A DNA stretch of 64,000 nt from Schmidtea polychroa (GCA_044892525.1 CM097885.1:29202001-29266000); one strand, 5' to 3'. Positions 19,916 through 49,964 are shown, numbered from the stretch's first letter. Translations and numbers: made by a program. The notes: generated from the sequence alone by a model not told the origin.

Positions 19916-22900
19916 TGTTGGGGTTACACCTCGGCTGACCACTCTACCATGTTGACGGGTCTAAGGGTTGATTGTCCATCTCGAATAAAAGGTGCCACCG
20001 ATTTGTCAACCTGGAGTGAAACCCCACATAACTTTCTTCCAACATAGTGCCCGTGAATCACTTCACGTTGGTACTGCACTATGCAGGCGAGACGCCAGCA
20101 AGCAGGTGAGCTTCTGCCTTAAAACTACTCCTTGCTGAGGCCTCGACTTCCCATTCACGACTGCCGATAGAAGGGCTTACGTCCATTTCCTTACACAACC
20201 GCTTATCGGGATTCGCTGAATGCAAATTGGGAATTTCTCACTAGATCTTGCGGGTTCTCTACTCGACCCACTTAATTAAAGTCTAATTATTCATGAACGA
20301 AGACGTGTAAGACAACAAGATTTATTAATTTCAATGTTATGACACAAGGATTCAGCTGTACACTTTACTAACGTTTGTCGAAAGAAGAGAAAACATCATA
20401 ATCAACATAGATCGGATCCTTGTTCCTCATCCTGACCGCCACTGGGATTTTATTGTTTCTCCCATTCAGTGTCGGCGAATAATTCGTCGAGGTTGAAAAA
20501 CTCGGAAGCGTTCTCTTCCCACCTTACGCCAGCGGCTGATATGATTCGTGCCGAGGGTCCCGTTGTTAGGTCGATGGACACGTGAGAGTTGCCACCGCTG
20601 GTTGAGTCCTCTATTGCTGGGATGTTTGGCTTTGTAGTAGCGCGCTCGCGCTGTCTCTTCTTGCGCTCTGCACGAGAGAGTTGTTTTCGCTTGGGTTTGC
20701 TTGAAGATGCCACTTGCAGAAGGGTGACTGATACGGATGGACTAGCAGTGGGGGGCTTACTGGTACCCGTGATGACAACATCTGGTCGCTTGGGGGACAA
20801 TTCGGTTTCGACGCAGTCTCGGCACGGTCTCTTGAATGGTGGAGATGGATTCGAGGAAAGGTTGTGATGAGGCGGAAAGATGTCATCGGCCTCTCGGATG
20901 GGAATTTGCACTATTTTCCGGGTTGTAGCCGCCTGCACGTAAACCTTATGCAGTGCCTCGGATTGTTCTCTGATTAGACTTCTTTGGGCACGGCTCTCAG
21001 ATATTAGCGCGTCCCGGCAATGCTCACTACGATCGAGCTTCTTTTGGATCTCTTTCATCCGAGCGGGACTAAACCATGTCCCTTCCAGCTCGTCTATCTT
21101 CCTCTTGTAACGTCCAATCTGAGTTTGTAGGTCCTTTATCACCGTATTTTTATCCGCGCACGAGAAGCACGGCCGTAATGCTGATTTAGTGGTTGGTAGC
21201 ATGCTTGCTATAAATAATACTAATGAAATGTAGAACATACGATTTTAGAATAAATTAGATACGACCTACGGCCATTCGTGGATGCTTGACCGACGAAAAA
21301 AAAAAAAGAAAACTTATTCTACAATCCGGTTTTACCACGGATCTTATTTGTTGAAACAATTTATTTGACCAAATGCCATCGGTTTGACGCATGCTATTAA
21401 CTTTGACTCTCTATTGATCTAACTGTATACATGAGGGGCGTAATAATTAATAGGGGGTAAATATAATATTGGTGAAACACTATAATAATGCTTTAGTAGA
21501 GGGACATTATAGTATGCGACTACACCTTGCTATAAATTATCTATTTAAATTTATTGCAAACAAATTACTATCGCTATTCTCAACATATTTTTTGATTCGA
21601 AATTTGTTATTGGAAGTGCACTTTTAATTCGGTAGTGAATGTGATTATCTATATTGTCTACCATTTGTCTGAGAATATGTGATGAGTTTACATCAGCCAT
21701 TACTTGAACCCCCTAATGGGATATCTCATCGGTCATAACACATGTCCAAATTTACGGATACTACTGTCGACTAGTTGATTACATTATCGACCTATTGTGA
21801 ATGTCACGTGTCGCGACTATTATGTATGCTAGTCTGATATTTTGTGCTCTCACCACATGGATTCGCGTATGGCTACTATCTTATCTCACTCACTTGGTGT
21901 ATGCCATTTTCACGGTGATTTTATCGATCCTGCTGTCGTATGATTTTCTCTGCACAGTGATTTATTTGAGTTATGATTTATGCTACCGCCAGTTCTCATC
22001 GCGGAATTTTACCCTTATCAACTTGTGTGAATGATCACCATCGTTTGGAAATTTATTGGATCTTTTCAGTGATCGTCGAGGGAATAATTCTACCAAATAT
22101 TGGAGCATATTACTACTCTCGTCATTCTACTCGGATTTTCCTATTCAGATGTAATGCCGTCTCGATGAAACCTGCCCTTAGCCATTCGAAATTTTCCCTC
22201 AGGTTCAATAATTTGGATATATACAGTGATGACCTGGCTCTTATTGTAGAAATAAATGTTATTAATTAAATTTGGTAATATTTTACCTGTTTATAATTTT
22301 TGAAATAACTAAGTCTATAAAAACTTTCTGATTATAATACTAGAGAGGTTTTCGTAGAATCTCGCATTTTATAGTTTCGAGTTAGTTAAAGTTTTTAGAA
22401 TACTTTCGTAACTTGACATACAATCTGGACAGGTTAGATGACATTGGGTCTATGATAACGGAATTTCATACGAAATTAGTTCTACTGAGTCCGGCAAATA
22501 GACGTTGTCGCAATTAATTTGATAAAACCATGTTTCCAGATGAAGTGTACTATGAGATGTTGTTATTTTTGACGAAGTTCACTAAATCGTGGTCTGGATC
22601 TCTTTTTTCAATAGGGGTAAGATTTACGAAAACGACTTGACGAAAGAAAAAGGAATGCGACGCCCTCAGTCACTGTGCAAATCCTTGAAAATCCCTTCAT
22701 TCGTACGACTATCTTTGTGAAATCATTGTCTACCGGTTATTTTTTATCCATACCCCATTGTGATAATTTAGTCGCATCTTCAGCGATAGGACCCGTGAAG
22801 AAGCCTTCACATTTCGGCCCAATCTAGCTGCGTGATTGAAATACTCCATGTCCACCGGCTGAGCTCCCGAAGGCACCTCATACCATGACATGGAGTATCT

Positions 22901-23784
22901 CAACTCCACGTTACTCGTTAAATGGAAATTCATAAAATCTTTAATTCAAATAAAATACGGACATCTGGATAAAAATATTTTATTGATTCTGAAATACTTA
23001 AATAATACAAATTCCATCAATACGTTAAAGTTATTAAAATGGAGAATCAAATGAAGAGAGCTAACTAAAATATTTAATCGTTAATATTTAACATTACTAT
23101 TAGCTTTGCAAATACTTAAATAAATCTATAAACAAATGAAATACCCCTTACTATTGTTTAGGCTGAGTCAAAATTCAATGTTGTTCGTTCCAAATAGTTT
23201 GAATGGTGGTCCGTTGGATGTCGATTATTGTGATGAATGGTATTTCGGTCTCTGAACTGGTTTTGAATAGTCGTGGAGTTTTCTGAATGACGGTTGCTTG
23301 GCTAGTAGTGTCGATCCTATGAAATGCTCGGGGTTAACAGTAAAAACAGTAAACATTTTTCTTACCTATGAAATGCTCGGGGTTAACAGTAAATTTAATG
23401 TTTTTGGTAGTTGTATATATATCAAATTCTTATTTGTGCGGACCAATCAGAGTTGAGTACCGCTTATTTCTATTAATTTAATATAATTTTCTTGTTTTTA
23501 GGTTGTTTTTTCCTTATTTTCTTTATTTTTAATATGTTTTTCTATTTATTTCCTTAATTTCCTTATTATTTCTTGAATTCCTCTTTATTTATTTGTCAAC
23601 TTGTTCTATTTTAATCTTTTCTTAATTTTATTTTTTGTTTTAATTCTTATGTCTTAATTATTATTTTCCTTATATCTTATTCTATTTTATTTCTGATTTT
23701 ATTTATTTTATTATTATTTTTCTTAATGTTCTACTTCCCTACTTTCTTATTTCTCAACGATTAAATTCTCGACTCAGCCCAACA
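19916..23784 (-). repeat. 3' LTR (3,869 bp)
   Basis: Direct repeat of 46096-49964. Same length, and all ORF-track translations match between the two copies. Confidence 0.97.
20450..21238 (-). CDS. LTR-encoded protein, 3' LTR copy (coiled coil, Pro/Ser linker, basic NLS-like KPKRKQLSRAERKKRQRER, acidic tail); likely start at 21202
   Basis: 262-codon ORF, GC-richer than its surroundings and identical to the 5' LTR copy. A TAG acceptor at 21208-21209 precedes the MLPTTK ATG. Confidence 0.75.
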   Translation of the reverse strand: MFYISLVLFIASMLPTTKSALRPCFSCADKNTVIKDLQTQIGRYKRKIDELEGTWFSPARMKEIQKKLDRSEHCRDALISESRAQRSLIREQSEALHKVYVQAATTRKIVQIPIREADDIFPPHHNLSSNPSPPFKRPCRDCVETELSPKRPDVVITGTSKPPTASPSVSVTLLQVASSSKPKRKQLSRAERKKRQRERATTKPNIPAIEDSTSGGNSHVSIDLTTGPSARIISAAGVRWEENASEFFNLDELFADTEWEKQ

Positions 23785-24013
23785 AATCACTCGGGGACCC
23801 ATCAAAATTGCGTCCCGCAATTGCATAATTAACTTAATTCATTCATTCAAAAAAAAAAAATATAACACGAACACGGAAAATTATACAACAATGATAAAAA
23901 TTTTATTGTAAGATCAAGGTCAAAGCAAGATCAAGCAAGTATCACTTAAGGTGATAGTTTGTACATACAATAAAAGTTTCCACATATAATAACACAAATG
24001 TTTGAGTTAGAGT

Positions 24014-24682
24014 TTATGAACTGTTAACCATTGATGCTTCTGCTGGCGGCTGTTGGTTGGTTTGGGTATTGATGTTGAGATAGGTCTGACTATTAGATTT
24101 CGGCTGGATTGGTTGATTACTCGGGGTTCGAGGTCGGAATGGGGTTGGGTTAAGATTTGTCAGGGGCACTTCTTGAGGATTTTGGTTCGAGGTTACTCTT
24201 ATTGATGTCGAGATTCTACATCTATTTCGAATTTCGTAAATTTTCATGAATATTGGTAGACATAGGAGGAGGGTCTCTGCGATCACCACATATATGAGAT
24301 AATGGGTGTCATTGATCTCGGGAGGTGTTTTTGGCTTTTCTACAAGATTTTCAAAATCCTCTTGTTGCATTTGTTGTTCCAACTGGTCGATCTGTTGGCT
24401 TTGTTCGAAGATTTGTTTGTTTATCATTTTACAATTGGGGTTCTTTTTACACATTGTTTGGATGTTGTTGATGTGGGATCGGGTTGATTGAATGGTTTGG
24501 ATGATATGGGTTTTCACGGTCATAGGGTATGTGCATTTGCCGGATTCTTGTTTAGGTTCTTGATTTTGATTGCGGTAATCTCGTACGATTTTCGGTTGGG
24601 CGTTTAATTGTTTGTTCTCCATCGGAATCATCAATACCATCATTGTTATCATCATCTCGCCTCGCATGATACTATTATACAT
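24014..24682 (-). CDS. Accessory type I membrane-like protein of unknown function
   Basis: N-terminal hydrophobic segment (MMITMMVLMIP), Cys-containing and coiled-coil ectodomain, TM YLIYVVIAETLLLCLPIFM, and a Pro/Gln/Asn-rich tail. Confidence 0.75.
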   Translation of the reverse strand: MYNSIMRGEMMITMMVLMIPMENKQLNAQPKIVRDYRNQNQEPKQESGKCTYPMTVKTHIIQTIQSTRSHINNIQTMCKKNPNCKMINKQIFEQSQQIDQLEQQMQQEDFENLVEKPKTPPEINDTHYLIYVVIAETLLLCLPIFMKIYEIRNRCRISTSIRVTSNQNPQEVPLTNLNPTPFRPRTPSNQPIQPKSNSQTYLNINTQTNQQPPAEASMVNSS

Positions 24683-24722
24683 TCATTATGTTTATTTACA
24701 ATTGGTTTTAATGACCCTTAAT

Positions 24723-25475
24723 TTAATGGTTCTGATTTGGATTATTTTCACCGATTCTCATCAAGGTGGACTCTGCTTTAATTACCCTGTGTCTTAACTC
24801 GGGCAGCATTTCCAATTGTCGGTCTTTTTCACGGGCTTCTCTCTTTAGATGTCTAATTTCTTTTTCCAAGCGTCTAATTTCTTCCCTTTTCTTTTCAAGG
24901 TTTCTTTTTAGCTCGATTTGTAGGAGATCTTGTTCGTTTTCTTGCAGGTAATTTTGTTGTTGATGTTTTCTTTCTATTTCTCTATATTTGCGGACCCACT
25001 TCCTCATTTCTTTACTTTCCCGTTGGTTTTCTTCTAGTTGTCGTTTTAATTTATTTATAGCTGTTTGGCGCTCCTTCGCCTCAGTTTTCCAGTAGTCTTG
25101 GATTACCTCCTTTGCTTTGAAGCTTGCCCTCTCTTTCCATAGCTCTTCCGCTATCTTTTCCCAGTTTTTCCCTCGCTTCCTTTGTTCGTGTAGCCATTCA
25201 TTTTCCTCTTCCGTTTCTCTTTTTATTTCCCCCAACGCTTCGCACTCTTTCTTTAACACCTTTATCATTTTCCGGTCCTCCAGGTATTTGTTTATTAATC
25301 TCCCGTTTTCGTATTTCTCTTCCCGTAACTCGGCCTTTAGCGTTTGTGTTTCTGTTGTTTCTGCCTCAATCTCTCCCTCTTCTACGTCGCTCATAATTTC
25401 TATCATTTCCTCGATTTTCATATCTATAATATGTACAGTTAATGGTGCGCTATAGTGCGACTTATACGTATACAT
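24723..25475 (-). CDS. Accessory coiled-coil protein (likely start 25421, MKIEE...)
   Basis: Long E/K/R-rich heptad ORF with the A-rich sense-strand bias of the element. TAG acceptor 2 nt before the ATG at 25421. Confidence 0.75.
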   Translation of the reverse strand: MYTYKSHYSAPLTVHIIDMKIEEMIEIMSDVEEGEIEAETTETQTLKAELREEKYENGRLINKYLEDRKMIKVLKKECEALGEIKRETEEENEWLHEQRKRGKNWEKIAEELWKERASFKAKEVIQDYWKTEAKERQTAINKLKRQLEENQRESKEMRKWVRKYREIERKHQQQNYLQENEQDLLQIELKRNLEKKREEIRRLEKEIRHLKREAREKDRQLEMLPELRHRVIKAESTLMRIGENNPNQNH

Positions 25476-25589
25476 TGATATAAAATTTAATAGTTTGGGT
25501 TACAGTCCCTTGAATACTTTTACAATACTTTAATTTTTTTGTTTGGGATATACGTCCCGGTTTTTAGTTTTTCATCTTTTCATCCACCC

Positions 25590-26645
25590 TCATACGAAGG
25601 TTTCCTCCTGGCCTACATAACCTTCATCACTATCGACCGCGGAATGTAACTGTATCGCAATAGGGTCGTATGGTAGGTAATATTGGGGAATTTGAGCTCT
25701 CAATTCACTAACTTCGTCTCTTAGAGCTCGAGTGATATTCAATTCCTCGTCGAGCAGATAGGTGAGATACCTTGTCTCTTCATCTTGCGCCTCTATCTGT
25801 TTGTCTAGGGCCTTGATTTTCTCGTCGCCCTTCCATTTTTCAATTTCTATTTCTAAGTTTTTAATATTTTCGGTGTACATTTTCCTTTCGTTTTCTAATT
25901 TTCTGTTTTTTCCTGCTAGGACCATGTTTCTTTGTTCCAGCGATCCTTGTAATCCATTAAGGTCTCTTTTCATCTCTTCTACCTGATTTACTAATTCCAC
26001 AACCCGTCCCGCTTGTTGGGTTATCATCTCTTCCATTGCGGCGTTCTCGTGCTCTCTTATGTCGCACTTCATTGCCAAATGTCGCTCAAACTCCATAGCC
26101 TTTGTTTGCCAGGTTTGGCTTCGGGCGGCGACCTTTCTCAACCTTTTCAATTCTTCCTTTATTATTAAATTCTCCTCCCATTTACCTTGTTCGCTTTCAT
26201 ATCCGAGTCTCATGGGCAATTCTTTCATCTCTTTTTTCATTTCTCTGTTTTGTCTTTTCCATTTCCTCGCTTCTGCCACTAAGTGCATCATTTTCCTGTC
26301 TTCTATTTGTTTTTCCGCTTCGCGCTTGGTGTTCTCATCGGTAAGTCTCTTTCTCGCTTCCTGCACTAGCTGCTTTAAGTAGTGGCTGTGTGCTTCTTGG
26401 CGGGTATTTTCTAGTGACGCCCATTTTGATGCTCTTTTGCATGCTTCTGCTTCCGCTCTTAAGTTGTGTATTAACCATTGGTATTGACTATTCTCATCTT
26501 CTCTAGTTTCTTCGATGTGATTTCGGGTGAGATTAGTTAGTTGGAACATTACTTTGTTCCATTTTTTGTTATGTTCTCGGGGAATTTGTGTCTTGTTGAC
26601 ATTGGTTGGGGCTATCGCAGTTTCGGTTATTTTCTCTTTTGTCAT
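25590..26645 (-). CDS. Accessory coiled-coil protein (351 aa)
   Basis: Long open frame, predominantly heptad and charged, with the same codon bias as the element. Confidence 0.8.
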   Translation of the reverse strand: MTKEKITETAIAPTNVNKTQIPREHNKKWNKVMFQLTNLTRNHIEETREDENSQYQWLIHNLRAEAEACKRASKWASLENTRQEAHSHYLKQLVQEARKRLTDENTKREAEKQIEDRKMMHLVAEARKWKRQNREMKKEMKELPMRLGYESEQGKWEENLIIKEELKRLRKVAARSQTWQTKAMEFERHLAMKCDIREHENAAMEEMITQQAGRVVELVNQVEEMKRDLNGLQGSLEQRNMVLAGKNRKLENERKMYTENIKNLEIEIEKWKGDEKIKALDKQIEAQDEETRYLTYLLDEELNITRALRDEVSELRAQIPQYYLPYDPIAIQLHSAVDSDEGYVGQEETFV

Positions 26646-26838
26646 CTCTAAATCATAGACATCGATTAATCTTTTTATTATGAAAAAGGAATTTATTCAT
26701 TATTTACTGTTTCTTGGGAAATTTTCGCATCATTTTTGGGTTTTCGTATTTATGGTTTTCATACTATTATTATATAATATTTTATTGGTTATATACACCG
26801 ATATATACAGATTATTATATACAACATTATTCGATTGG

Positions 26839-28227
26839 TTATTCCGTTCTACCCTTCTCCTCTTTCCTCACGGTCATCTTGATATATATGGTATCATTTC
26901 TCGCCATATCTTCCACTCTTTGTTGTGAGATGAACGTGGGTGCTCCTGTTGCTGATCCTTCTTCGTTGAGGGGCCTCTGGTAAGCTATTTGATTCCCCGT
27001 TGTTTTGAAGCTTTGCTCATGTATACTTTGGTTGTTCATCAGAGTAATATCGATTTTTGCCTGGAACGGCCATTCTAATATTTCGTCGTATTCTCCTTTA
27101 CATAACAGAAAGAAAATCGAAAAGTGCGTGTTTAATCCGGTTCCGTCCCCGTTGGGATATATCTTCATTTTCATTTTGTACCCATTTTTCCAAGAGTGGA
27201 ATGTAGGACTTGTTATTCTTGTCTCTTCTCCGGTTTTTGCTTTTCGTATTCTTTCTTTTACTCCCGTTATTTTCCATATGTAGGGTGCTGTTGGGGTTAT
27301 CTCATTTAGATTTATTTCCCGTATTTTCTGATGTAGCTCCTTGGCCTGATTATTACTGATTTCTGTTCGGTTTATTTGCATCTTTATGTTTGCTCGGGCT
27401 TCTTCGAACGCTTCCCTTTCTTCTAGTAGTTCTTTGACTAACACTTTCAACGATGTTATCTCTATCTCCATTTGTTTTACTTTCTCTTCGCTTTCTTGTA
27501 GCGCAGTCGACCACATTTCTGCGTGAGTTGAAGCATTTTCTACTAAATGATGTGGTAACTCACCTCGGTGTAGTAGTTTCTGACAACCCCATCTACCTAG
27601 TACACATGTCATTCTTTTCTTTGCGCATTCCCTTAGATGCTGTGCCACCTTCATTATTTCCCCTTGGTTACATCCGTTTGGGCATTCCCCACTGAACTCT
27701 GCACATACTCTCTCCTCTTGGACATTGTGATGTTTGAGGGTGAGATTTATCCACGTATCTATTTCTCCACAGTGTTCACATCTTTCCAATCTCTCTTCAC
27801 ACTGCCTTTGATGCTCTTTTTCTTCGCTTGCTCGAATGGTTTTATGGCACCTTTCACACTGGCCAATTCTGTACATACATTCTCCCATATGTTGTACTAC
27901 CTTCCATATTACTCCTTTCCATTCGCATGGGGCATTTTTGCATCCCAGGTTGGTGTTTAACATGTCTTTCACTGCGGCTTTATCCTCGTTAGTGTCTTCT
28001 AAACTCGATATTAGTGTCTCTTTACACACCGGGCACCTCTGTGGTCTATTCTTTATTGCTTCACTGATACATTCTTTACATACTCTGCATCCACATTGCG
28101 TTTGGTGAGGTTCCTTTAACAACTTTTCACATATTCCGCACATAACATGTTTGTGTATTCTGATCGTTGTAGATTTTCGGACTTGCTCGACAATCTCTCT
28201 GAACTCTTCTCTTTGTCGTTTATCCAT
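26839..28227 (-). CDS. Intronless TRAF (TNF receptor-associated factor) homologue: RING, TRAF zinc fingers, coiled coil, MATH domain
   Basis: RING CGICEKLLKEPHQTQCGCRVCKECI...CPVC, followed by repeated CxxC..H..C fingers. The MATH domain contains YIWKI, GYKMKMKIYPNGDG and GEYDEILEWPF. Confidence 0.95.
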   Translation of the reverse strand: MDKRQREEFREIVEQVRKSTTIRIHKHVMCGICEKLLKEPHQTQCGCRVCKECISEAIKNRPQRCPVCKETLISSLEDTNEDKAAVKDMLNTNLGCKNAPCEWKGVIWKVVQHMGECMYRIGQCERCHKTIRASEEKEHQRQCEERLERCEHCGEIDTWINLTLKHHNVQEERVCAEFSGECPNGCNQGEIMKVAQHLRECAKKRMTCVLGRWGCQKLLHRGELPHHLVENASTHAEMWSTALQESEEKVKQMEIEITSLKVLVKELLEEREAFEEARANIKMQINRTEISNNQAKELHQKIREINLNEITPTAPYIWKITGVKERIRKAKTGEETRITSPTFHSWKNGYKMKMKIYPNGDGTGLNTHFSIFFLLCKGEYDEILEWPFQAKIDITLMNNQSIHEQSFKTTGNQIAYQRPLNEEGSATGAPTFISQQRVEDMARNDTIYIKMTVRKEEKGRTE

Positions 28228-28312: not shown

Positions 28313-28672
28313 TTAGGGTTCGGAAGAGTCGGCTTCGTGCCCACTCTCCTCTCTATTCATTAGCCATTCCGACCAGTCTTCTATTTCTGTCTGTTCTGCT
28401 TCCTCCCTCATTCGGTCTATTTCAATTTCCTGTCGACGGCTATATTGGGTTATCCTCTCTATCTCTCTTTGCATTTGTTCGATTTTTAACCTCTGGTCTT
28501 CAATTATCTTCAAATAACTAAATCCTCTGTTCATACTCTCGATCAGGTTTCTGTGCATCGTCAGTCCTTGTTCTTGCAAATTGGACACTAATTGTGCTAA
28601 TACGGCACATTGTTGCTTCCATAATTCTTCAGTTACTGTATTGTGGTTCATTTCGTTATTTCCTTGATCCAT
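28313..28672 (-). CDS. Small accessory coiled-coil protein (about 119 aa from MDQGNN)
   Basis: Open frame immediately downstream of the polyprotein, with a TAG 2 nt before the ATG at 28672. The track start at 28696 is a TTG. Confidence 0.65.
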   Translation of the reverse strand: MDQGNNEMNHNTVTEELWKQQCAVLAQLVSNLQEQGLTMHRNLIESMNRGFSYLKIIEDQRLKIEQMQREIERITQYSRRQEIEIDRMREEAEQTEIEDWSEWLMNREESGHEADSSEP

Positions 28673-28832
28673 TCCTAATTTATATACACTTTTCAACTCT
28701 TATGTAAATTTAATTTTATTTTATGCTTCCCGTTATTGTATAATATTGATACCGCGCTTATATAGAGATATAGTACTGTTATATACATAAGATATACTTA
28801 CTTTTTACAATTATATACAGTCATATTCCTTT

Positions 28833-29837
28833 CTATATGCGTGAGTTTGGAGGGCGCTGAACGTTCCAGGCCTCCACCCACTGTCCTTGTTTGATATCAC
28901 TTGGTCGTTTCACTCGATGTTGGAAGTTTCTGATTCGGGTCATTTCTAGTTCTCCGCGATGTCGTTTATCTTTAATTATTTTTATTGTTCCCCCCGTTAT
29001 GATTAGGAATGCCCCTGTTATTATTATCCCACTGATCCACATCATCTGCTTCACGCTTATACTCTCTGGTTTTTCCTTGTTTGTTAATGTTGATATCGCT
29101 TCTGTACTTTTCTCGTTTCCTCTTTTGCCATTTCCTTTCATCATTTCCCGTATTCTTGCTATTTCCTCGTTCATACCCTCCTTTGCCATCTTTTGTATTT
29201 TTTCCATCTCTTCCTCCGAAACATAGTTGTCCTGAGCTTCCTCACCAGTTTTCTTGTGCTTTCCTCCTTCGTTCTTTTCGTCGTGGTTTTTTCTTTTCTT
29301 TCCTCTTTTCCCCGGGTATCGTCGGCATTCTCTTTTTGATTCATTCCTCCAGATACAAACCGTGTATTCTTTCGGCGGCTGCTGCTGCGTCACATATTGA
29401 TGGCATCTCTCACCTGGTCCTAATCTTGAAATACAGACTTTGTGCTCTTTTCTAGGTTGGATCTGCGTTATTACTACTTCACCACCTTTTCCTAGGTGTA
29501 CCTCTTTTCCTTTGACGTTCGTTATTCTCTTCCCGTCTCGATTTCGGTATGCTTCTTGTATTCTTACTTCTGTTATTGGTTCTGTGTCCTCATTTATCAG
29601 TACTAGTTTCTGATACGCTCTAGACATGCATCTTCCTAGTATGCACCTTTCCTTTAAGTCCCATTCTTCCTTTAAATCCCACTGCTGCTCTTGTGCTTGC
29701 TTTCTCTTTTCTTGTTTTAGTTCATCCTCTTTGCTATCTTGATTCTCCGCTTCTTTGGTTTCTTTTATCGTTCTCGTCCCTCCCTGAGCTGTTACTAACT
29801 CTATCATGGTAAGCATAATTATCATTAATATCATATT
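28833..29837 (-). other. Polyprotein domain: C-terminal type I membrane protein (internal signal peptide 29787-29837, TM about 28978-29046)
   Basis: MILMIIMLTMIELVTA|QGG is signal-peptide-like and MMWISGIIITGAFLIITGGTIKII is TM-like. The intervening region has two similar Cys motifs. Confidence 0.65.
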
Positions 29838-42686: not shown

Positions 42687-43952
42687 GATTGGTGTTCTAG
42701 GTTCGTCTGTTTCTTTTAAATTGTCTAACGATGTGACTAAACTTTGGGCTGATAATTCCTCGGTTGACGTTGCTAAACTATTAGTGATATCGGACAGACT
42801 TTCTCTACTTCGAGATCGACTAGGGGTATATCCGAGATTTTCTTGGTCAAATATGGGTACTTGATTGGTTCTTCTGGATCCTTGTGATATTCCTCTTTGA
42901 TGTTTAATGGATCGTCCTCTTTTGAGTTGTTGTAATTCGTCTCCTGAAAATAATACGTCTCCTGGCTTACTAGAAGATCTAAGATTGGGTTTATCCGTGA
43001 TTCCTTTCTTACGCTTCTTGGTAATTAGCGGCTATTGAATCGGACGCGTTCGGTTCTGATTGTGTTTCTAATTCTTGGCAGATGGCTGCTAATACTTCTT
43101 CCGTTCTGGAGTCTTCCGGTCGCTGTGTCTCTCGGTGCGGGTTCTGAATGGATTTATCCTTGGTTGATTGTCGATTTTCTTCGAATTCCTTTTGTGCAGG
43201 TTCTGGATTGTCTTGGTTGGCTGGATTGGCTTGATATCTAAAATGAAAAAATGATCTCGTGTTGCATTTGCTTACACGACTTCATCATTCTTTCTACAAC
43301 ATTCAAAAACAGACACCTTTTAGGTTTCTGTTTGTGCTTCCCCTATCTTTTGTGAAATCCTGTCTGCGGTTTATAATATCCCATCAGCCCGTATTTTCCG
43401 TCGATTTTAAATTATCTATATGGGGTAGTAACAATTATCTATAAAGTCGTAATAATTATCTATTCGTTATCAATTATAGTAAAAATAGGTCGTTGTCGGT
43501 CTCTGCTTATTACCCCCCTTTCATTTTCCTAATCCTTTTGCGCTGTTGTCGCTATTTTACTTTTCATATTCACTATTATTACGCTCGGTTCTACTCTGGA
43601 ACCAATAAAATGCATTTTTCCCGGTTTAACCCAAAAAAAAAAAAAAATATTCCGTAGAGTTTCTCTACTTCACTGGGATCCCTTTAATTAGTTAGTTACT
43701 TTCCTCTTTACTCATTATCATCATTTCATCTATTCTTTATTTTCTATTATCTCTTTAATTCGTTTCCTTCTTCCCTTTCCTTTTTCATTATAATCTTATT
43801 TTCTTTTCCACGAGCTCGTTTATTCCCTCTCTAAACTCTAATTTTCAAAATTACATTCAATTTGTTCTAGCTAGCTTTAATATTCCATATCACTAGTAAT
43901 TTAAATATTATCTCATTGTAGCTTAACTGCTATCTCTCGCTTTTCTAGGCCT

Positions 43953-44692
43953 TTACGACTGGCTGGCACTATTCAACAGCTCAATCTTCTTCCTTCTGAT
44001 CGGTTGGACTATTCAACAACTCGATCTTACGACTGGCTGGCACTATTCAACAGCTCAATCTTCCTCCTTCCTGATCGGTTGGACTTTTCACAACTCGACC
44101 TTACGACTGGCTGGCACTATTCAACAGCTCAATCTTCCTCCTTCCTGATCGGTTGGACTTTTCACAACCCGACCTTACGACTGGCTGGCACTATTCAACA
44201 GCTCAATCTTCTTCCTTCTGATCGGTTGGACTATTCAACAACTCGATCTTACGACTGGCTGGCACTATTCAACAGCTCAATCTTCCTCCTTCTTGATCGG
44301 TTGGACTTTTCACAACTCGACCTTACGACTGGCTGGCACTATTCAACAGCTCAATCTTCCTCCTTCTTGATCGGTTGGACTTTTCACAACTCGACCTTAC
44401 GACTGGCTGGCACTATTCAACAGCTCAATCTTCCTCCTTCTTGATCGGTTGGACTTTTCACAACTCGACCTTACGACTGGCTGGCACTATTCAACAGCTC
44501 AATCTTCCTCCTTCTTGATCGGTTGGACTTTTCACAACTCGACCTTACGACTGGCTGGCACTATTCAACAGCTCAATCTTCCTCCTTCCTGATCGGTTGG
44601 ACTTTTCACAACTCGACCTTACGACTGGCTGGCACTATTCAACAGCTCAGTCTTCCTCCTTGACCGGCTGGATTATTCGACAGCTCGGCTTC
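43953..44692. repeat. Tandem array of about 10 x 74-bp units in the element leader
   Basis: TTACGACTGG recurs at 43953, 44027, 44101, 44175, 44249, 44323, 44397, 44471, 44545 and 44619. The last unit is degenerate. Confidence 0.97.
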
Positions 44693-45267: not shown

Positions 45268-45753
45268 TCATTCGCCATAATAGACCATATGGGTCTCTTT
45301 TATTTCATATTTGCACATCGTGCATCTTTTTAGGTCTTTTACACACTCTTCACAGTGACTGAGGTGTCCACACGGTAAGAATAATACGCGAATAGGACGG
45401 AGTTTGCAGGCTATACAAGTTCGTAATTGGTTAACTTTTTCCTGTATTTTTTGTTCGATTGCATCTGGTATTGTATTTAGTGAGTCTTTTAGACGCTGAT
45501 AATCTAGATTTAATGTTGGGTGGTTCAATCTCTCTTGATACCACTGATATACGGTTTCGGGGTTTATTTTTCCATCTGGGCGACTTAGGCCTGTGGCTAA
45601 TATCATATGATTAGGTACGACTGGTGTTTGTCCGATTGCTTGTAGTAATATCGCGTTGATTTTTTCTCTTTTATGCGTCAGTGTTGTTAGGGAGTCGTTT
45701 TCTATATCGATAAACTTGAGCAGTTGTTGCATTTGGTTCGCGAATTCTGTCAT
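45268..45753 (-). CDS. 161-aa protein with an IAP-type C-terminal RING (no BIR domain), upstream of gag
   Basis: EQKIQEKVNQLRTCIACKLRPIRVLFLPCGHLSHCEECVKDLKRCTMCKYEI matches the IAP RING pattern. Strong acceptor TTACTTTTCCAACAG|CT-ATG, and AATAAA at 45120-45125 followed by a GT/T-rich tract. Confidence 0.85.
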   Translation of the reverse strand: MTEFANQMQQLLKFIDIENDSLTTLTHKREKINAILLQAIGQTPVVPNHMILATGLSRPDGKINPETVYQWYQERLNHPTLNLDYQRLKDSLNTIPDAIEQKIQEKVNQLRTCIACKLRPIRVLFLPCGHLSHCEECVKDLKRCTMCKYEIKETHMVYYGE

Positions 45754-46070
45754 AGCTGTTGGAAAAGTAATGTTTTAATAATATGTAGTAAATTAATAGT
45801 TAATTCGTTAATTGGTTTCTTTAACCATTGTTAATTATTTAATTTGACTACTTTATCTCCTTTATTTATATATATCCTTAATTTTTCTATTATCTACATT
45901 TTGCTTTTCTCTACTTAGTTCCTAATATAATTTAATAATCAATAGTCAATTTGCATTCGTCAAGCAATGGTCGGTCGAAAACAGAAAATCGATGTGATAA
46001 ATCCCTTTAATTTTTTATGAAAATCCCGGTGAATTTCGCATTCGTTAATAGAAATTTCAATCGACTGTAG

Positions 46071-46088
46071 ATCCCGGCTGAGCCCCCA
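46071..46088 (-). promoter_or_regulatory. Primer-binding site complementary to the 3' end of tRNA-Pro
   Basis: TGGGGGCTCAGCCGGGAT, 16/18 identical to the MLV tRNA-Pro PBS (TGGGGGCTCGTCCGGGAT), located 7 nt inside the 5' LTR boundary. Confidence 0.9.
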
Positions 46089-46629
46089 AAAATCATGTTG
46101 GGGTTACACCTCGGCTGACCACTCTACCATGTTGACGGGTCTAAGGGTTGATTGTCCATCTCGAATAAAAGGTGCCACCGATTTGTCAACCTGGAGTGAA
46201 ACCCCACATAACTTTCTTCCAACATAGTGCCCGTGAATCACTTCACGTTGGTACTGCACTATGCAGGCGAGACGCCAGCAAGCAGGTGAGCTTCTGCCTT
46301 AAAACTACTCCTTGCTGAGGCCTCGACTTCCCATTCACGACTGCCGATAGAAGGGCTTACGTCCATTTCCTTACACAACCGCTTATCGGGATTCGCTGAA
46401 TGCAAATTGGGAATTTCTCACTAGATCTTGCGGGTTCTCTACTCGACCCACTTAATTAAAGTCTAATTATTCATGAACGAAGACGTGTAAGACAACAAGA
46501 TTTATTAATTTCAATGTTATGACACAAGGATTCAGCTGTACACTTTACTAACGTTTGTCGAAAGAAGAGAAAACATCATAATCAACATAGATCGGATCCT
46601 TGTTCCTCATCCTGACCGCCACTGGGATT

Positions 46630-47418
46630 TTATTGTTTCTCCCATTCAGTGTCGGCGAATAATTCGTCGAGGTTGAAAAACTCGGAAGCGTTCTCTTCCC
46701 ACCTTACGCCAGCGGCTGATATGATTCGTGCCGAGGGTCCCGTTGTTAGGTCGATGGACACGTGAGAGTTGCCACCGCTGGTTGAGTCCTCTATTGCTGG
46801 GATGTTTGGCTTTGTAGTAGCGCGCTCGCGCTGTCTCTTCTTGCGCTCTGCACGAGAGAGTTGTTTTCGCTTGGGTTTGCTTGAAGATGCCACTTGCAGA
46901 AGGGTGACTGATACGGATGGACTAGCAGTGGGGGGCTTACTGGTACCCGTGATGACAACATCTGGTCGCTTGGGGGACAATTCGGTTTCGACGCAGTCTC
47001 GGCACGGTCTCTTGAATGGTGGAGATGGATTCGAGGAAAGGTTGTGATGAGGCGGAAAGATGTCATCGGCCTCTCGGATGGGAATTTGCACTATTTTCCG
47101 GGTTGTAGCCGCCTGCACGTAAACCTTATGCAGTGCCTCGGATTGTTCTCTGATTAGACTTCTTTGGGCACGGCTCTCAGATATTAGCGCGTCCCGGCAA
47201 TGCTCACTACGATCGAGCTTCTTTTGGATCTCTTTCATCCGAGCGGGACTAAACCATGTCCCTTCCAGCTCGTCTATCTTCCTCTTGTAACGTCCAATCT
47301 GAGTTTGTAGGTCCTTTATCACCGTATTTTTATCCGCGCACGAGAAGCACGGCCGTAATGCTGATTTAGTGGTTGGTAGCATGCTTGCTATAAATAATAC
47401 TAATGAAATGTAGAACAT
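46630..47418 (-). CDS. LTR-encoded protein, 5' LTR copy (likely start 47382)
   Basis: Same translation as 20450-21238. Acceptor TAG at 47388-47389; the stop codon overlaps an AATAAA. Confidence 0.75.
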   Translation of the reverse strand: MFYISLVLFIASMLPTTKSALRPCFSCADKNTVIKDLQTQIGRYKRKIDELEGTWFSPARMKEIQKKLDRSEHCRDALISESRAQRSLIREQSEALHKVYVQAATTRKIVQIPIREADDIFPPHHNLSSNPSPPFKRPCRDCVETELSPKRPDVVITGTSKPPTASPSVSVTLLQVASSSKPKRKQLSRAERKKRQRERATTKPNIPAIEDSTSGGNSHVSIDLTTGPSARIISAAGVRWEENASEFFNLDELFADTEWEKQ

Positions 47419-49544
47419 ACGATTTTAGAATAAATTAGATACGACCTACGGCCATTCGTGGATGCTTGACCGACGAAAAAAAAAAAAGAAAACTTATTCT
47501 ACAATCCGGTTTTACCACGGATCTTATTTGTTGAAACAATTTATTTGACCAAATGCCATCGGTTTGACGCATGCTATTAACTTTGACTCTCTATTGATCT
47601 AACTGTATACATGAGGGGCGTAATAATTAATAGGGGGTAAATATAATATTGGTGAAACACTATAATAATGCTTTAGTAGAGGGACATTATAGTATGCGAC
47701 TACACCTTGCTATAAATTATCTATTTAAATTTATTGCAAACAAATTACTATCGCTATTCTCAACATATTTTTTGATTCGAAATTTGTTATTGGAAGTGCA
47801 CTTTTAATTCGGTAGTGAATGTGATTATCTATATTGTCTACCATTTGTCTGAGAATATGTGATGAGTTTACATCAGCCATTACTTGAACCCCCTAATGGG
47901 ATATCTCATCGGTCATAACACATGTCCAAATTTACGGATACTACTGTCGACTAGTTGATTACATTATCGACCTATTGTGAATGTCACGTGTCGCGACTAT
48001 TATGTATGCTAGTCTGATATTTTGTGCTCTCACCACATGGATTCGCGTATGGCTACTATCTTATCTCACTCACTTGGTGTATGCCATTTTCACGGTGATT
48101 TTATCGATCCTGCTGTCGTATGATTTTCTCTGCACAGTGATTTATTTGAGTTATGATTTATGCTACCGCCAGTTCTCATCGCGGAATTTTACCCTTATCA
48201 ACTTGTGTGAATGATCACCATCGTTTGGAAATTTATTGGATCTTTTCAGTGATCGTCGAGGGAATAATTCTACCAAATATTGGAGCATATTACTACTCTC
48301 GTCATTCTACTCGGATTTTCCTATTCAGATGTAATGCCGTCTCGATGAAACCTGCCCTTAGCCATTCGAAATTTTCCCTCAGGTTCAATAATTTGGATAT
48401 ATACAGTGATGACCTGGCTCTTATTGTAGAAATAAATGTTATTAATTAAATTTGGTAATATTTTACCTGTTTATAATTTTTGAAATAACTAAGTCTATAA
48501 AAACTTTCTGATTATAATACTAGAGAGGTTTTCGTAGAATCTCGCATTTTATAGTTTCGAGTTAGTTAAAGTTTTTAGAATACTTTCGTAACTTGACATA
48601 CAATCTGGACAGGTTAGATGACATTGGGTCTATGATAACGGAATTTCATACGAAATTAGTTCTACTGAGTCCGGCAAATAGACGTTGTCGCAATTAATTT
48701 GATAAAACCATGTTTCCAGATGAAGTGTACTATGAGATGTTGTTATTTTTGACGAAGTTCACTAAATCGTGGTCTGGATCTCTTTTTTCAATAGGGGTAA
48801 GATTTACGAAAACGACTTGACGAAAGAAAAAGGAATGCGACGCCCTCAGTCACTGTGCAAATCCTTGAAAATCCCTTCATTCGTACGACTATCTTTGTGA
48901 AATCATTGTCTACCGGTTATTTTTTATCCATACCCCATTGTGATAATTTAGTCGCATCTTCAGCGATAGGACCCGTGAAGAAGCCTTCACATTTCGGCCC
49001 AATCTAGCTGCGTGATTGAAATACTCCATGTCCACCGGCTGAGCTCCCGAAGGCACCTCATACCATGACATGGAGTATCTCAACTCCACGTTACTCGTTA
49101 AATGGAAATTCATAAAATCTTTAATTCAAATAAAATACGGACATCTGGATAAAAATATTTTATTGATTCTGAAATACTTAAATAATACAAATTCCATCAA
49201 TACGTTAAAGTTATTAAAATGGAGAATCAAATGAAGAGAGCTAACTAAAATATTTAATCGTTAATATTTAACATTACTATTAGCTTTGCAAATACTTAAA
49301 TAAATCTATAAACAAATGAAATACCCCTTACTATTGTTTAGGCTGAGTCAAAATTCAATGTTGTTCGTTCCAAATAGTTTGAATGGTGGTCCGTTGGATG
49401 TCGATTATTGTGATGAATGGTATTTCGGTCTCTGAACTGGTTTTGAATAGTCGTGGAGTTTTCTGAATGACGGTTGCTTGGCTAGTAGTGTCGATCCTAT
49501 GAAATGCTCGGGGTTAACAGTAAAAACAGTAAACATTTTTCTTA

Positions 49545-49630
49545 CCTATGAAATGCTCGGGGTTAACAGTAAATTTAATGTTTTTGGTAGTTGTATATAT
49601 ATCAAATTCTTATTTGTGCGGACCAATCAG
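49545..49630 (-). promoter_or_regulatory. Putative LTR core promoter (CCAAT and TATA-like) and first splice donor
   Basis: A CCAAT box at about 49623-49627 lies about 25 nt upstream of a TATATATAC tract (minus strand). CATAG|GTAAGA donor at 49545. The same arrangement occurs in the 3' LTR (23365-23450). Confidence 0.5.
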
Positions 49631-49964
49631 AGTTGAGTACCGCTTATTTCTATTAATTTAATATAATTTTCTTGTTTTTAGGTTGTTTTTTCCTTATTTT
49701 CTTTATTTTTAATATGTTTTTCTATTTATTTCCTTAATTTCCTTATTATTTCTTGAATTCCTCTTTATTTATTTGTCAACTTGTTCTATTTTAATCTTTT
49801 CTTAATTTTATTTTTTGTTTTAATTCTTATGTCTTAATTATTATTTTCCTTATATCTTATTCTATTTTATTTCTGATTTTATTTATTTTATTATTATTTT
49901 TCTTAATGTTCTACTTCCCTACTTTCTTATTTCTCAACGATTAAATTCTCGACTCAGCCCAACA

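What the first reader, a model, noticed from the sequence alone, without database searches (positions are those of the whole stretch)
19916..49964. A 30-kb enveloped retrotransposon carrying a virus-like TNF/NF-kB/apoptosis manipulation toolkit
One element encodes a TRAF, an IAP-type RING protein, a Bcl-2-like fold, IkB-like ankyrin modules, three ubiquitin-like domains, a possible CARD, a fusion glycoprotein and two more membrane proteins. TRAF, IAP RING, Bcl-2 and ankyrin proteins all act in death-receptor, innate-immune and apoptosis pathways, and large DNA viruses (pox-, baculo-, polydnaviruses) carry such mimics. Giant planarian Burro elements are known, and I recall IAP and MATH cargo being reported for some. 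This full combination with an envelope suggests an infectious particle that also rewires host-cell survival. That interpretation is inference.
Basis: partly seen in the sequence, partly recalled or inferred. Interest (0 to 1): 0.95.

Follow-up and report, generated by a model that had tools for sequence, protein, structure and literature searches.

The report
Intact giant Burro-type planarian retroelement
This is an intact, very recently inserted 30-kb copy of a giant "Burro"-type flatworm retrovirus-like element. It does carry an envelope gene plus TRAF, IAP-type RING, ubiquitin-like and ankyrin modules, but this cargo and the idea that it tampers with host cell-death signalling were already published in 2007-2019.

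Summary
The element is real and its bounds are exact. Two 3,869-bp, 100% identical LTRs sit at 19916-23784 and 46096-49964, with TG..CA ends and a 4-bp target duplication. All genes are on the minus strand and none is broken.

Confirmed:
- a 4,617-aa polyprotein ordered Gag, 3 zinc knuckles, 3 ubiquitin-like domains, in-frame fusion glycoprotein (Pfam 5e-70), PR, RT, RNase H, IN, 2 ankyrin modules and a C-terminal membrane module;
- a separate full-length TRAF;
- a small protein with an IAP-type RING but no BIR;
- a 222-aa membrane protein.

The Bcl-2-like domain is only weakly supported: sub-threshold but concordant hits here and in a distant relative. A CARD and any specific IkB likeness are not supported.

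Arkhipova & Yushenova 2019, citing Jurka 2007 and Grohme 2018, already describe this architecture for Burro/GYPSM1. It includes the in-frame env and the idea that the element meddles with apoptosis and ubiquitination. The Gag-Env-Pol backbone in flatworms was published in 2026.

Three modest additions:
- TRAF moves between an in-frame and a stand-alone position across families;
- the ubiquitin-like, probable Bcl-2-like and Env block is shared with ~16-kb metagenomic relatives that lack TRAF and RING;
- a membrane-threading model for the polyprotein.

Function remains inference.

The parts
19912..19915 (.). Target-site duplication, left copy (CCGG)
   Evidence: Read directly from the sequence.
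19916..23784 (-). 3' LTR (3,869 bp, TG..CA ends). It contains a 262-aa ORF at 20450-21238.
   Evidence: 100% identical to 46096-49964.
24014..24682 (-). Accessory ORF, 222 aa, with one predicted transmembrane segment (aa 128-146)
   Evidence: No Pfam family at significance.
24723..25475 (-). Accessory ORF, 250 aa, highly charged and coiled-coil-like
   Evidence: 48% E/K/R/Q; only weak coiled-coil family hits.
25590..26645 (-). Accessory ORF, 351 aa, coiled-coil-like
26839..28227 (-). Full-length TRAF gene, 462 aa: RING, TRAF zinc fingers, coiled coil and TRAF-C/MATH
   Evidence: Pfam MATH 1.6e-27 and RING. PDB TRAF2/1/3 at 5e-28 and TRAF6/5 RING-ZnF at 1e-14.
28313..28696 (-). Accessory ORF, 127 aa, coiled-coil-like (TTG start as listed; the true start is uncertain)
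28833..42686 (-). Giant polyprotein ORF, 4,617 aa, uninterrupted
   Evidence: PR DTGA, RT YIDD, IN HHCC and three CCHC knuckles are all present.
42252..42533 (-). Gag domain (aa 52-145)
   Evidence: PF03732 3e-9.
41781..41933 (-). Three CCHC zinc knuckles (aa 252-302)
   Evidence: PF00098; pattern count.
40467..40697 (-). Ubiquitin-like domain 1 (aa 664-740)
   Evidence: Profile A1 against PDB; beta-beta-alpha pattern in the model; homologous to P0002.
39921..40175 (-). Ubiquitin-like domain 2 (aa 838-922)
   Evidence: Model pLDDT is 74-78 here, and Foldseek hits SUMO1, NEDD8 and ubiquilin UBLs.
39027..39233 (-). Ubiquitin-like domain 3 (aa 1152-1220)
   Evidence: PF00240 at E 0.0028; profile A1. 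The homologous stretch of relative P0082 passes the Pfam ubiquitin and Rad60-SLD cut-offs.
37899..38465 (-). All-helical region with a weak Bcl-2-family match (aa 1408-1596; Pfam match aa 1483-1555)
   Evidence: Inconclusive: every score is below threshold.
37839..37898 (-). Hydrophobic segment (aa 1597-1616), read as an internal signal or signal-anchor for Env
   Evidence: Read from the sequence. An equivalent hydrophobic segment is present in all aligned relatives. Its function is inferred.
36099..37838 (-). Fusion glycoprotein (Env), ectodomain plus transmembrane segment (aa 1617-2196)
   Evidence: PF24664 5.4e-70; TM aa 2178-2196; 14 Cys and one RxKR site.
35223..35498 (-). Aspartic protease (aa 2397-2488)
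   Evidence: PF00077 2e-9; DTGA motif.
34083..34559 (-). Reverse transcriptase (aa 2710-2868)
   Evidence: PF00078 1e-35; YIDD motif.
33507..33896 (-). RNase H (aa 2931-3060)
   Evidence: PF17917 7e-39 and PF17919 4e-37.
32616..33185 (-). Integrase: zinc-binding domain plus catalytic core (aa 3168-3357)
   Evidence: PF17921 4e-20 and PF00665 2e-12.
30912..32057 (-). Ankyrin module 1 (aa 3544-3925)
   Evidence: Ank_2 2e-17. PDB hits are generic ankyrin proteins.
29856..30911 (-). Ankyrin module 2 (aa 3926-4277), a paralogue of module 1
   Evidence: 25% identity over 226 aa to module 1, E 2e-13.
28836..29855 (-). C-terminal membrane module (aa 4278-4617): signal-like segment, ~250-aa Cys-containing stretch, TM and short tail
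   Evidence: Hydropathy; 6 Cys; no family hit.
43879..44692 (.). Tandem array of a 74-bp unit (about 10 copies) in the leader between the RING ORF and gag
45268..45753 (-). 161-aa ORF with a C-terminal IAP-type RING and no BIR
   Evidence: PF13920 3.4e-11. The cIAP2, cIAP1, ML-IAP and XIAP RINGs are the best PDB hits. No BIR on this strand upstream of gag.
46070..46088 (-). Candidate primer-binding site: a TGG-initiated 19-mer, 7 nt after the 5' LTR
   Evidence: Read from the sequence. The matching tRNA was not identified; the window holds no tRNA gene.
46096..49964 (-). 5' LTR (3,869 bp). It contains the same 262-aa ORF at 46630-47418.
49965..49968 (.). Target-site duplication, right copy (CCGG)

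Best explanation
The region is one complete copy of a giant Ty3/gypsy (Metaviridae) LTR retroelement of the planarian 'Burro'/GYPSM1 kind, on the minus strand and inserted very recently.

Shown:
- Two identical 3.9-kb LTRs, a target duplication, and an unbroken 4,617-aa polyprotein with intact protease, reverse transcriptase, RNase H and integrase motifs.
- A viral-type fusion glycoprotein encoded in frame between Gag and Pol.
- Three ubiquitin-like domains, two ankyrin modules, a separate full-length TRAF gene and a small IAP-type RING protein.
- Three coiled-coil ORFs, a small membrane protein and an ORF inside each LTR.

Inferred, replication: it replicates like a retrovirus-like element, by transcription from the 5' LTR, tRNA-primed reverse transcription and integration.

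Inferred, membrane topology:
- The polyprotein is threaded through the ER membrane.
- The hydrophobic segment at aa 1597-1616 starts translocation of the Env ectodomain.
- The Env TM (aa 2178-2196) stops translocation, leaving PR-RT-IN-ANK in the cytosol.
- A second signal-like/TM pair (aa 4281-4303 and 4553-4571) places the C-terminal module in the membrane.
- Protease and host signal peptidase then release the parts.

Inferred, weaker (about 0.4): the TRAF, IAP-type RING, ubiquitin-like, ankyrin and probable Bcl-2-like modules engage host ubiquitin, TRAF-dependent signalling and cell-death pathways to favour survival of expressing cells. This was already proposed for Burro in 2019.
For: - LTRs, target duplication and strand.
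- ORF statistics.
- Backbone domains and motifs.
- Env: PF24664 5.4e-70 with a flanking signal-like segment and a TM.
- TRAF.
- RING.
- Ubiquitin-like domains.
- Ankyrin modules.
- Cargo is old, not a chance passenger. UniParc fragments P0001-P0003 carry the same helix+UBL modules and TRAF parts at only 31-36% identity, with TRAF in frame inside the polyprotein.
- The UBL and the weak Bcl-2 match recur at the same place in relative P0082, which is 29% identical.
- Literature match: 30-kb size, three CCHC knuckles, tandem repeats, in-frame env between BCL2 and PR, and MATH_TRAF, ankyrin, Ubi2/SUMO and BCL2-like motifs (PMC6431247).
- GAG-ENV-POL order with gB-type Env in Platyhelminthes: PMC13524379.
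- BURRO1 is transcribed and under PIWI control: PMC8532177.
Against: - No reference Burro sequence could be fetched, so family membership rests on architecture and on three distant UniParc fragments. The host species is inferred, not shown.
- BIR and dUTPase-like motifs reported for Burro1 were not found here.
- Every Bcl-2 score is below significance, and both AF2 models are poor.
- Nothing here shows expression, processing, particles or any effect on host pathways.
- LTR identity could be inflated by assembly polishing or gene conversion.
- The membrane topology comes from hydropathy alone.
Confidence: 0.85

Rival explanations
1. The cargo serves the element's own particle assembly and trafficking rather than manipulation of host immunity or apoptosis. 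On this reading, ubiquitin-like domains next to Gag and RING/TRAF E3-type modules would supply ubiquitin-dependent sorting or budding signals. The trimeric TRAF coiled coil and the coiled-coil ORFs would act as scaffolds. The ankyrin modules would act as adaptors.
For: - The ubiquitin-like domains sit inside the Gag-proximal part of the polyprotein and are the most widely conserved cargo. They are also found in relatives that lack TRAF and RING.
- Three further accessory ORFs are plain coiled coils.
- It is established that retroviral budding uses ubiquitin and ESCRT.
Against: A complete TRAF with a receptor-binding TRAF-C domain, an IAP-type RING and a probable Bcl-2-like domain are all signalling or death-pathway parts. 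No late-domain or ESCRT link was tested.
Confidence: 0.3
2. The cargo genes are inert passengers: host gene fragments transduced by a bloated element, with no selected function.
For: - No functional data exist.
- Cargo content differs between families: TRAF is in frame or separate, BIR is present or absent, and the ANK position differs.
Against: - All seven accessory reading frames and the 4,617-codon ORF are open in an A+T-rich genome where shuffles never exceed 206 codons.
- TRAF and UBL modules persist at 31-36% identity in other families, which implies long retention.
Confidence: 0.07
3. The 30-kb unit is an artefact: a nested or chimeric assembly of several elements and host genes between two unrelated LTRs.
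For: Planarian genomes are repeat-rich and hard to assemble (PMC11410931).
Against: - Identical LTRs are flanked by a matching 4-bp duplication.
- All ORFs lie on one strand, tightly packed with 40-193-nt spacers, and 83% of the internal region is coding.
- There is no internal LTR or second RT.
- The architecture matches the published one.
Confidence: 0.02

Closest known systems
[quoted passage not shown] 2018; Arkhipova & Yushenova 2019, PMC6431247)
   Same: - Total length over 30 kb, multi-kb LTRs and tandem repeats.
- A single giant ORF1 with Gag, three CCHC knuckles, and env in frame between a BCL2-like motif and PR, followed by PR-RT-RH-IN and ankyrin repeats.
- MATH/TRAF and ubiquitin/SUMO-like cargo, plus accessory ORFs.
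- The hypothesis of a provirus that tampers with apoptosis and ubiquitination.
   Different: - ORF1 is 4,617 aa here, against 4,873 aa in Burro1.
- TRAF is a complete stand-alone gene after pol, not a MATH domain inside ORF1 (Burro1) nor an upstream ORF (the Dugesia/Girardia tigrina element).
- No BIR and no dUTPase-like match were found. The IAP likeness is a RING-only 161-aa ORF upstream of gag.
- Identity to the only retrievable fragments is 31-36%. Which named Burro family this is could not be tested.
GAG-ENV-POL 'errantiviruses' with HSV/gB-type Env of Platyhelminthes, Nematoda and Bryozoa (PMC13524379, 2026), and the 14 metagenomic polyproteins found here (P0080-P0107)
   Same: - Ty3/gypsy pol, 42-46% identical.
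- The PF24664 glycoprotein lies in frame between gag and pol, preceded by a hydrophobic segment.
- Some have a ubiquitin-like domain and a weak Bcl-2 match before Env, and ankyrin repeats (P0082).
- They carry accessory ORFs after pol.
   Different: - They are about half the size: LTR-like repeats lie ~15-16 kb apart in L001 and L002.
- No TRAF/MATH or RING was detected.
- They carry RNase_T-like exonuclease ORFs instead.
- Their hosts are unknown.
Drosophila gypsy and other insect errantiviruses (Metaviridae)
   Same: An LTR retroelement of the Ty3/gypsy lineage that has acquired a viral fusion glycoprotein.
   Different: - Their env is a separate spliced ORF after pol, mostly of the F type.
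- They are 7-8 kb long and carry no host-signalling cargo.
Host-mimic genes of large DNA viruses (baculovirus IAPs, herpesvirus/poxvirus Bcl-2 homologues, poxvirus ankyrin proteins)
   Same: Analogy only: a mobile or viral genome carrying homologues of host cell-death and ubiquitin-pathway proteins.
   Different: - This is a reverse-transcribing element rather than a DNA virus.
- No BIR is present, and the Bcl-2 likeness is unproven.
- No function has been tested.
Complex retroviruses and foamy-like fish endogenous retroviruses with accessory ORFs (up to 17 kb; cited in PMC6431247)
   Same: Accessory ORFs beyond gag-pol-env enlarge the genome.
   Different: - Those are Retroviridae, with env after pol.
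- They are much smaller, and their cargo is not fused into one polyprotein.

Membership tests
Ty3/gypsy (Metaviridae) LTR retroelement | Long terminal repeats with TG..CA ends and a short target-site duplication | tested here: met
   3,869-bp LTRs, 100% identical; TG..CA ends; CCGG duplication.
Ty3/gypsy (Metaviridae) LTR retroelement | Gag followed by PR-RT-RNase H-IN in that order, with integrase after RT | tested here: met
   Pfam domains in this order, with catalytic motifs present.
Ty3/gypsy (Metaviridae) LTR retroelement | tRNA primer-binding site next to the 5' LTR | tested here: inconclusive
   A TGG-initiated 19-mer lies 7 nt after the LTR. No host tRNA was available to match it.
Burro / GYPSM1 | Total length above 30 kb with a giant single ORF1 polyprotein | tested here: met
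   30,049 bp; a 4,617-aa ORF.
Burro / GYPSM1 | env in frame between gag and pol | tested here: met
   PF24664 at aa ~1600-2207 of the same ORF, upstream of PR.
Burro / GYPSM1 | Cargo: MATH/TRAF, ankyrin and ubiquitin/SUMO-like motifs | tested here: met
   TRAF is a separate ORF here.
Burro / GYPSM1 | BCL2-like motif just before env | tested here: inconclusive
   PF00452 at E 0.033-0.14. The same weak hit occurs in relative P0082. Bcl-xL dominates a non-significant PDB list.
Burro / GYPSM1 | BIR and dUTPase-like motifs (reported for Burro1) | tested here: not met
   No PF00653 or PF00692 hit in any ORF or segment. These are not stated to be universal in the family.
Burro / GYPSM1 | Sequence similarity to the reference Burro1-4 / GYPSM1 entries | not testable with these tools
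   Repbase entries and the planarian genome are not in any searchable collection, and Grohme 2018 is not held. Only three UniParc fragments at 31-36% identity were found.
TRAF | N-terminal RING, TRAF zinc fingers, coiled coil and C-terminal TRAF-C/MATH | tested here: met
   Query aa 28-155 align to TRAF6/5 RING-ZnF, and aa 246-454 to TRAF2/1/3 coiled coil plus TRAF-C. Pfam MATH and RING.
IAP (inhibitor of apoptosis) | At least one BIR domain | tested here: not met
   No BIR anywhere. Only the C-terminal RING resembles IAPs, so this is not filed as an IAP.
Bcl-2 family | Significant match to the Bcl-2 family profile or fold | tested here: inconclusive
   All sequence scores are below cut-offs. 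The model has pLDDT 45 and the Foldseek result is meaningless. A hydrophobic C-terminal segment follows the region.
IkB | Ankyrin domain specifically related to IkB proteins | tested here: not met
   The best 60 PDB hits are ankyrin-1/2, Kidins220, NOMPC, TRPA1, gankyrin and DARPins; none is IkB.
CARD / death-fold | Match to a CARD, DD, DED or PYD profile | tested here: not met
   No such Pfam hit at E up to 1-10 in any ORF or segment. The fold could not be tested because the models are poor.
Viral fusion glycoprotein PF24664 (gB-type/class III according to PMC13524379) | Profile match, plus a signal-like segment, a Cys-rich ectodomain and a C-terminal TM | tested here: met
   5.4e-70 over profile positions 3-579 of 653; TM at aa 2178-2196; 14 Cys. 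The fusion class itself was not tested here: no PDB sequence hit.

The most novel reading that the evidence does not exclude
Three points go beyond what I could find in print.

1. The ubiquitin-like, probable Bcl-2-like, hydrophobic-segment and Env block is an old, conserved unit of a wider GAG-ENV-POL lineage. The hydrophobic tail after the helical domain may double as the internal signal for Env, so the polyprotein would be threaded through the ER membrane like a flavivirus polyprotein.

2. TRAF and RING are later planarian additions that shuttle between an in-frame and a stand-alone position.

3. A sizeable part of the reported planarian 'TRAF/MATH expansion' (99-121 transcripts; PMC6109357) is retroelement-borne rather than host signalling genes.
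Probability: 0.35. Interest if true: 0.5.

Novelty: already known. Interest (0 to 1): 0.25.

Why it matters
Burro-type elements are the largest known LTR retroelements. They are among the few reverse-transcribing elements that carry homologues of host cell-death, TRAF and ubiquitin-pathway proteins next to an envelope gene. A copy with identical LTRs and no broken gene is a clean exemplar for descriptive work on transcripts, proteome, structure and population distribution.

The discovery itself is not new, because both the cargo list and the 'tinkerer' hypothesis are in print. The cargo's function has apparently never been examined, which keeps some value in the locus. One practical point concerns planarian gene-family counts: the reported TRAF expansion may be inflated by such elements.

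Tried and rejected
- Relatives of TRAF and Env. The word-indexed protein search gave one distant TRAF hit and no Env hit. Scans of IMG/VR and JGI metagenome contigs with Env found nothing. PDB had no Env sequence hit. A PHROGs scan of Env was pointless and empty.
- Exhaustive HMMER of aa 600-1600 against 1.84 billion representatives found only two UniParc fragments. Their contigs are not on record, so no genomic context and no deep alignment were available.
- AF2 of the Bcl-2-like region as a single sequence gave pLDDT 45, and the Foldseek hits were meaningless. This was rejected as evidence either way.
- AF2 of aa 600-1230 with a 2-row alignment gave a mean pLDDT of 44. Only the UBL2 block is usable. 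The helical modules before each UBL, where a CARD might hide, stay unresolved.
- Rfam and tRNA scans of the window were empty.
- The self-comparison found no paralogy among the accessory ORFs or the tested polyprotein segments, apart from the two ankyrin modules.
- Grohme 2018 could not be read, so assignment to Burro-1/2/3/4 was not possible.
- Considered and rejected: a true IAP (no BIR), an IkB mimic (generic ankyrin only), a CARD (no signal) and an assembly chimera (target duplication plus identical LTRs plus a single coding strand).
I stopped and used them in no tool call, note or conclusion. The Bcl-2 assessment rests only.

Full report
**Observation**

The window holds a single complete LTR retroelement at exactly the coordinates given.
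- A self-comparison finds two direct repeats of 3,869 bp, at 19916-23784 and 46096-49964. They are 100% identical with no gaps.
- They begin with TG and end with CA, and are flanked on both sides by CCGG, a 4-bp target-site duplication.
- The element is 39-43% G+C, in a host background of about 25-30%.
- Its coding strand, the minus strand, is 41% A.
- All long reading frames lie on the minus strand. Stop-free stretches there reach 4732, 478, 368, 258 and 222 codons. The antisense strand has none of 200 or more, and 200 shuffles never exceeded 206.
- 83% of the internal region is coding, with spacers of 40-193 nt between the downstream ORFs.
- No gene is broken: I count zero internal stops or frameshifts in the eight reading frames.

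**Anatomy, 5' to 3' on the minus strand**

1. The 5' LTR, which holds a 262-aa ORF with a hydrophobic N-terminus and basic clusters.
2. A TGG-initiated candidate primer-binding site, 7 nt after the LTR.
3. A 161-aa ORF whose C-terminus is a PF13920 RING (3.4e-11). Its best solved-structure matches are the RINGs of cIAP2, cIAP1, ML-IAP and XIAP. There is no BIR domain here or anywhere else in the element.
4. A 74-bp tandem array of about 10 copies.
5. A 4,617-aa ORF, described below.
6. Five further ORFs downstream of the polyprotein: a 127-aa coiled-coil protein, a 462-aa TRAF, 351-aa and 250-aa coiled-coil proteins, and a 222-aa protein with one transmembrane segment.
7. The 3' LTR.

**The polyprotein**

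In order it contains:
- Gag (aa 52-145).
- Three CCHC knuckles (aa 252-302).
- A long charged region.
- Three repeats of 'helical module plus ubiquitin-like domain' (UBLs at aa 664-740, 838-922 and 1152-1220).
- An all-helical region with a weak Bcl-2 match (aa 1408-1596).
- A hydrophobic segment (aa 1597-1616).
- A fusion glycoprotein, PF24664 at 5.4e-70 (aa ~1600-2207, with its TM at 2178-2196).
- Protease (DTGA), reverse transcriptase (YIDD), RNase H and integrase (HHCC plus core).
- Two paralogous ankyrin modules, 25% identical to each other, E 2e-13.
- A C-terminal module with a signal-like segment, about 250 residues with six Cys, a TM and a short tail.

**The TRAF gene**

The TRAF is complete. 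Its aa 28-155 align to the TRAF6/TRAF5 RING-zinc-finger structures (1e-14). Its aa 246-454 align to the TRAF2/1/3 coiled coil plus TRAF-C (5e-28).

- TRAF, IAP-type RING, ankyrin repeats, fusion glycoprotein and additional membrane segments are confirmed as above.
- Ubiquitin-like domains are supported by several results.
  - Each single Pfam score is below threshold; the best is PF00240 at E 0.0028 for UBL3.
  - A profile of the three domains retrieves almost only ubiquitin-family structures (ubiquitin, ISG15, RAD23, ubiquilin, DSK2) down to E 1e-4.
  - In the otherwise poor AF2 model of aa 600-1230, the UBL2 block reaches pLDDT 74-78. All three regions show the beta-beta-alpha-beta pattern.
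  - A Foldseek search with the whole aa 600-1230 model returns ubiquilin, SUMO1, NEDD8, ISG15, BAG6 and Ddi1 UBLs, with target-normalised TM-scores of 0.7-0.8.
  - The stretch of relative P0082 that aligns with UBL3 passes the Pfam cut-offs for ubiquitin and Rad60-SLD.
- The Bcl-2-like fold remains inconclusive.
  - PF00452 scores E 0.033-0.14, over profile positions 28-100.
  - phmmer against PDB finds nothing.
  - The single-sequence AF2 model is all-helical but has pLDDT 45, and its fold search is meaningless.
  - In its favour, P0082 (29% identical over this part) gets the same weak hit (E 0.069, profile positions 25-100) at the same place just before Env.
  - A four-sequence profile of the homologous regions lists Bcl-xL in 28 of 33 rows, though at E about 1-2.
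  - The Pfam match ends at a G-G-W motif that is kept as G-G-W/L in three of the four sequences aligned (ours, L003, L004).
  - The literature reports a BCL2-like motif at this position in Burro elements.
- No CARD or other death-fold profile matched at lenient thresholds.
- The ankyrin modules match generic ankyrin proteins. No IkB is among the best 60 hits.

**What it is**

The architecture matches the published description of the giant planarian Burro/GYPSM1 elements (Arkhipova & Yushenova 2019, PMC6431247).
- That description gives a length over 30 kb with LTRs, an enormous ORF1, a typical Gag with three CCHC knuckles in S. mediterranea, and tandem repeats.
- It lists MATH_TRAF_C, BIR, ankyrin, BCL2-like and Ubi2/SUMO-like motifs.
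- The same text proposes that the elements are integrated proviruses and 'tinkerers' meddling with apoptosis and ubiquitination.

Two further papers add context. A 2026 paper reports that flatworm, nematode and bryozoan env-carrying Ty3/gypsy elements have gB-type Env in GAG-ENV-POL order (PMC13524379). BURRO1 is known to be abundant, transcribed in a tissue-biased way and repressed by SMEDWI-2 (PMC8532177).

The host is therefore most likely a dugesiid planarian. This is inferred from the architecture and the A+T-rich flanks; no tool could test it.

**Relatives found here**

The protein collections hold almost nothing close.
- Three UniParc fragments (P0001-P0003) are 31-36% identical.
  - P0002 has the same two helix+UBL modules, then a MATH domain, then the third helical module.
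  - P0003 continues from the post-UBL2 region straight into TRAF zinc fingers.
  - So in other families TRAF parts sit in frame between UBL2 and the third module. At that point this element has only an acidic linker, and its TRAF is a separate gene after pol. The 2019 review noted such alternation in general terms.
- A search with the pol region found 14 metagenome-derived polyproteins that are the closest by identity (42-46%). All carry PF24664 in frame between gag and pol.
  - Two of their contigs show LTR-like repeats 15-16 kb apart.
  - None has a recorded or detectable MATH, RING or BIR domain.
  - Several carry RNase_T-like exonuclease ORFs after pol.
  - P0082 has its ankyrin module between Env and PR.
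  - All aligned relatives have a hydrophobic segment directly before the Env ectodomain.

My reading is that the backbone plus the UBL, the probable Bcl-2-like region and Env are old. TRAF, the RING, the coiled-coil ORFs and the very long LTRs would be additions of the planarian lineage that roughly double the size.

**How it most likely works**

Shown: every part needed for an LTR-retroelement cycle is intact. The LTRs have no differences, which points to a very recent insertion. With an assumed neutral rate of 1e-9 to 1e-8 per site per year, fewer than one expected difference corresponds to roughly 13,000-130,000 years. Polishing or gene conversion could also keep the LTRs identical.

Inferred, membrane topology: because Env is in the middle of a cytosolic polyprotein, the hydrophobic segment at aa 1597-1616 should act as an internal signal or signal-anchor, and the Env TM as a stop-transfer. 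A second signal-like/TM pair would place the C-terminal module in the membrane. The element's protease and host signal peptidase would release the parts. A single RxKR site lies in the Env ectodomain, in the stretch between the two blocks that match the Pfam profile.

Inferred, more weakly (about 0.4): TRAF, the IAP-type RING, the UBLs, the ankyrin modules and the probable Bcl-2-like domain act on host TRAF-dependent signalling, ubiquitination and cell death.

A serious rival (about 0.3) is that the ubiquitin-like and E3-type parts serve particle assembly and sorting. Inert passengers (about 0.07) and an assembly artefact (about 0.02) are unlikely, for the reasons given under rival explanations.

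**Novelty and verdict**

What may be new is modest:
- the stand-alone complete TRAF and the RING-only IAP-like ORF in this family;
- the shared UBL and pre-Env block in smaller metagenomic relatives;
- the membrane-threading model;
- the possibility that part of the reported planarian TRAF/MATH expansion (PMC6109357) is retroelement-borne.

Interest is 0.25.

No repaired, consensus or joined sequence was built. The N run at 3770-3941 was left alone.

Noticed in passing
window 54258-55907 (-): A 549-aa ORF with a hAT-family C-terminal dimerisation domain (PF05699, 1.9e-13). It is a DNA-transposon transposase in the right flank.
   Followed up: partly
window 52319-52642 (+): A 107-aa ORF with a borderline NUDIX match (E 3e-4), possibly an exon or fragment of a host gene.
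   Followed up: no
window 3770-3941: A run of 172 N (assembly gap or masked stretch). It was left as it is.
   Followed up: no
window 20450-21238 and 46630-47418 (-): Each LTR contains the same 262-aa ORF, with a hydrophobic N-terminus, a coiled-coil-like stretch and basic clusters. It has no family match. Whether it lies in U3 or R/U5, and whether it is expressed, is unknown.
   Followed up: partly
window 43879-44692: About 10 copies of a 74-bp unit (96% matches) in the leader between the RING ORF and gag. There is no minus-strand ORF of 40 aa or more here. Tandem repeats are drawn in the published Burro figure, but their role is unexplained.
   Followed up: no
L002 19559-21613; L005 12169-13473; L006 13798-14982 and 15113-16390: The metagenomic GAG-ENV-POL relatives carry one or two ORFs after pol with RNase_T-like (DEDD exonuclease) matches; the best is E 3.4e-6. 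The window's element has none.
   Followed up: partly
L002 2334-5753; protein P0102: Fragmented bacterial-type efflux and regulator genes (MacB, ABC, YknX, TetR) lie beside a retroelement on one long-read contig. One relative is labelled as a Flavobacteriaceae MAG protein. This is probably a chimeric contig or mis-binning.
   Followed up: no
L001 16872-18689: A protein-primed DNA polymerase B ORF (PF03175), typical of Polinton/Maverick-like elements, lies next to the relative's retroelement.
   Followed up: no
L003 (protein P0082 aa ~2082-2299): In this relative the ankyrin module sits between Env and the protease rather than after the integrase. This shows module shuffling within the polyprotein.
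   Followed up: partly
one search hit list: The highest bit scores belong to dozens of 2,500-6,000-aa 'hypothetical proteins' of the pseudoscorpion Cordylochernes scorpioides, many listed with both Ty3/gypsy and copia-type families (35-37% identity). They look like gene models that fuse neighbouring retroelements, not relatives of the cargo.
   Followed up: no
literature, PMC6109357: A reported planarian-specific expansion of TRAF/MATH transcripts (99-121) is discussed without reference to Burro elements. Some of these transcripts may be element-borne.
   Followed up: no
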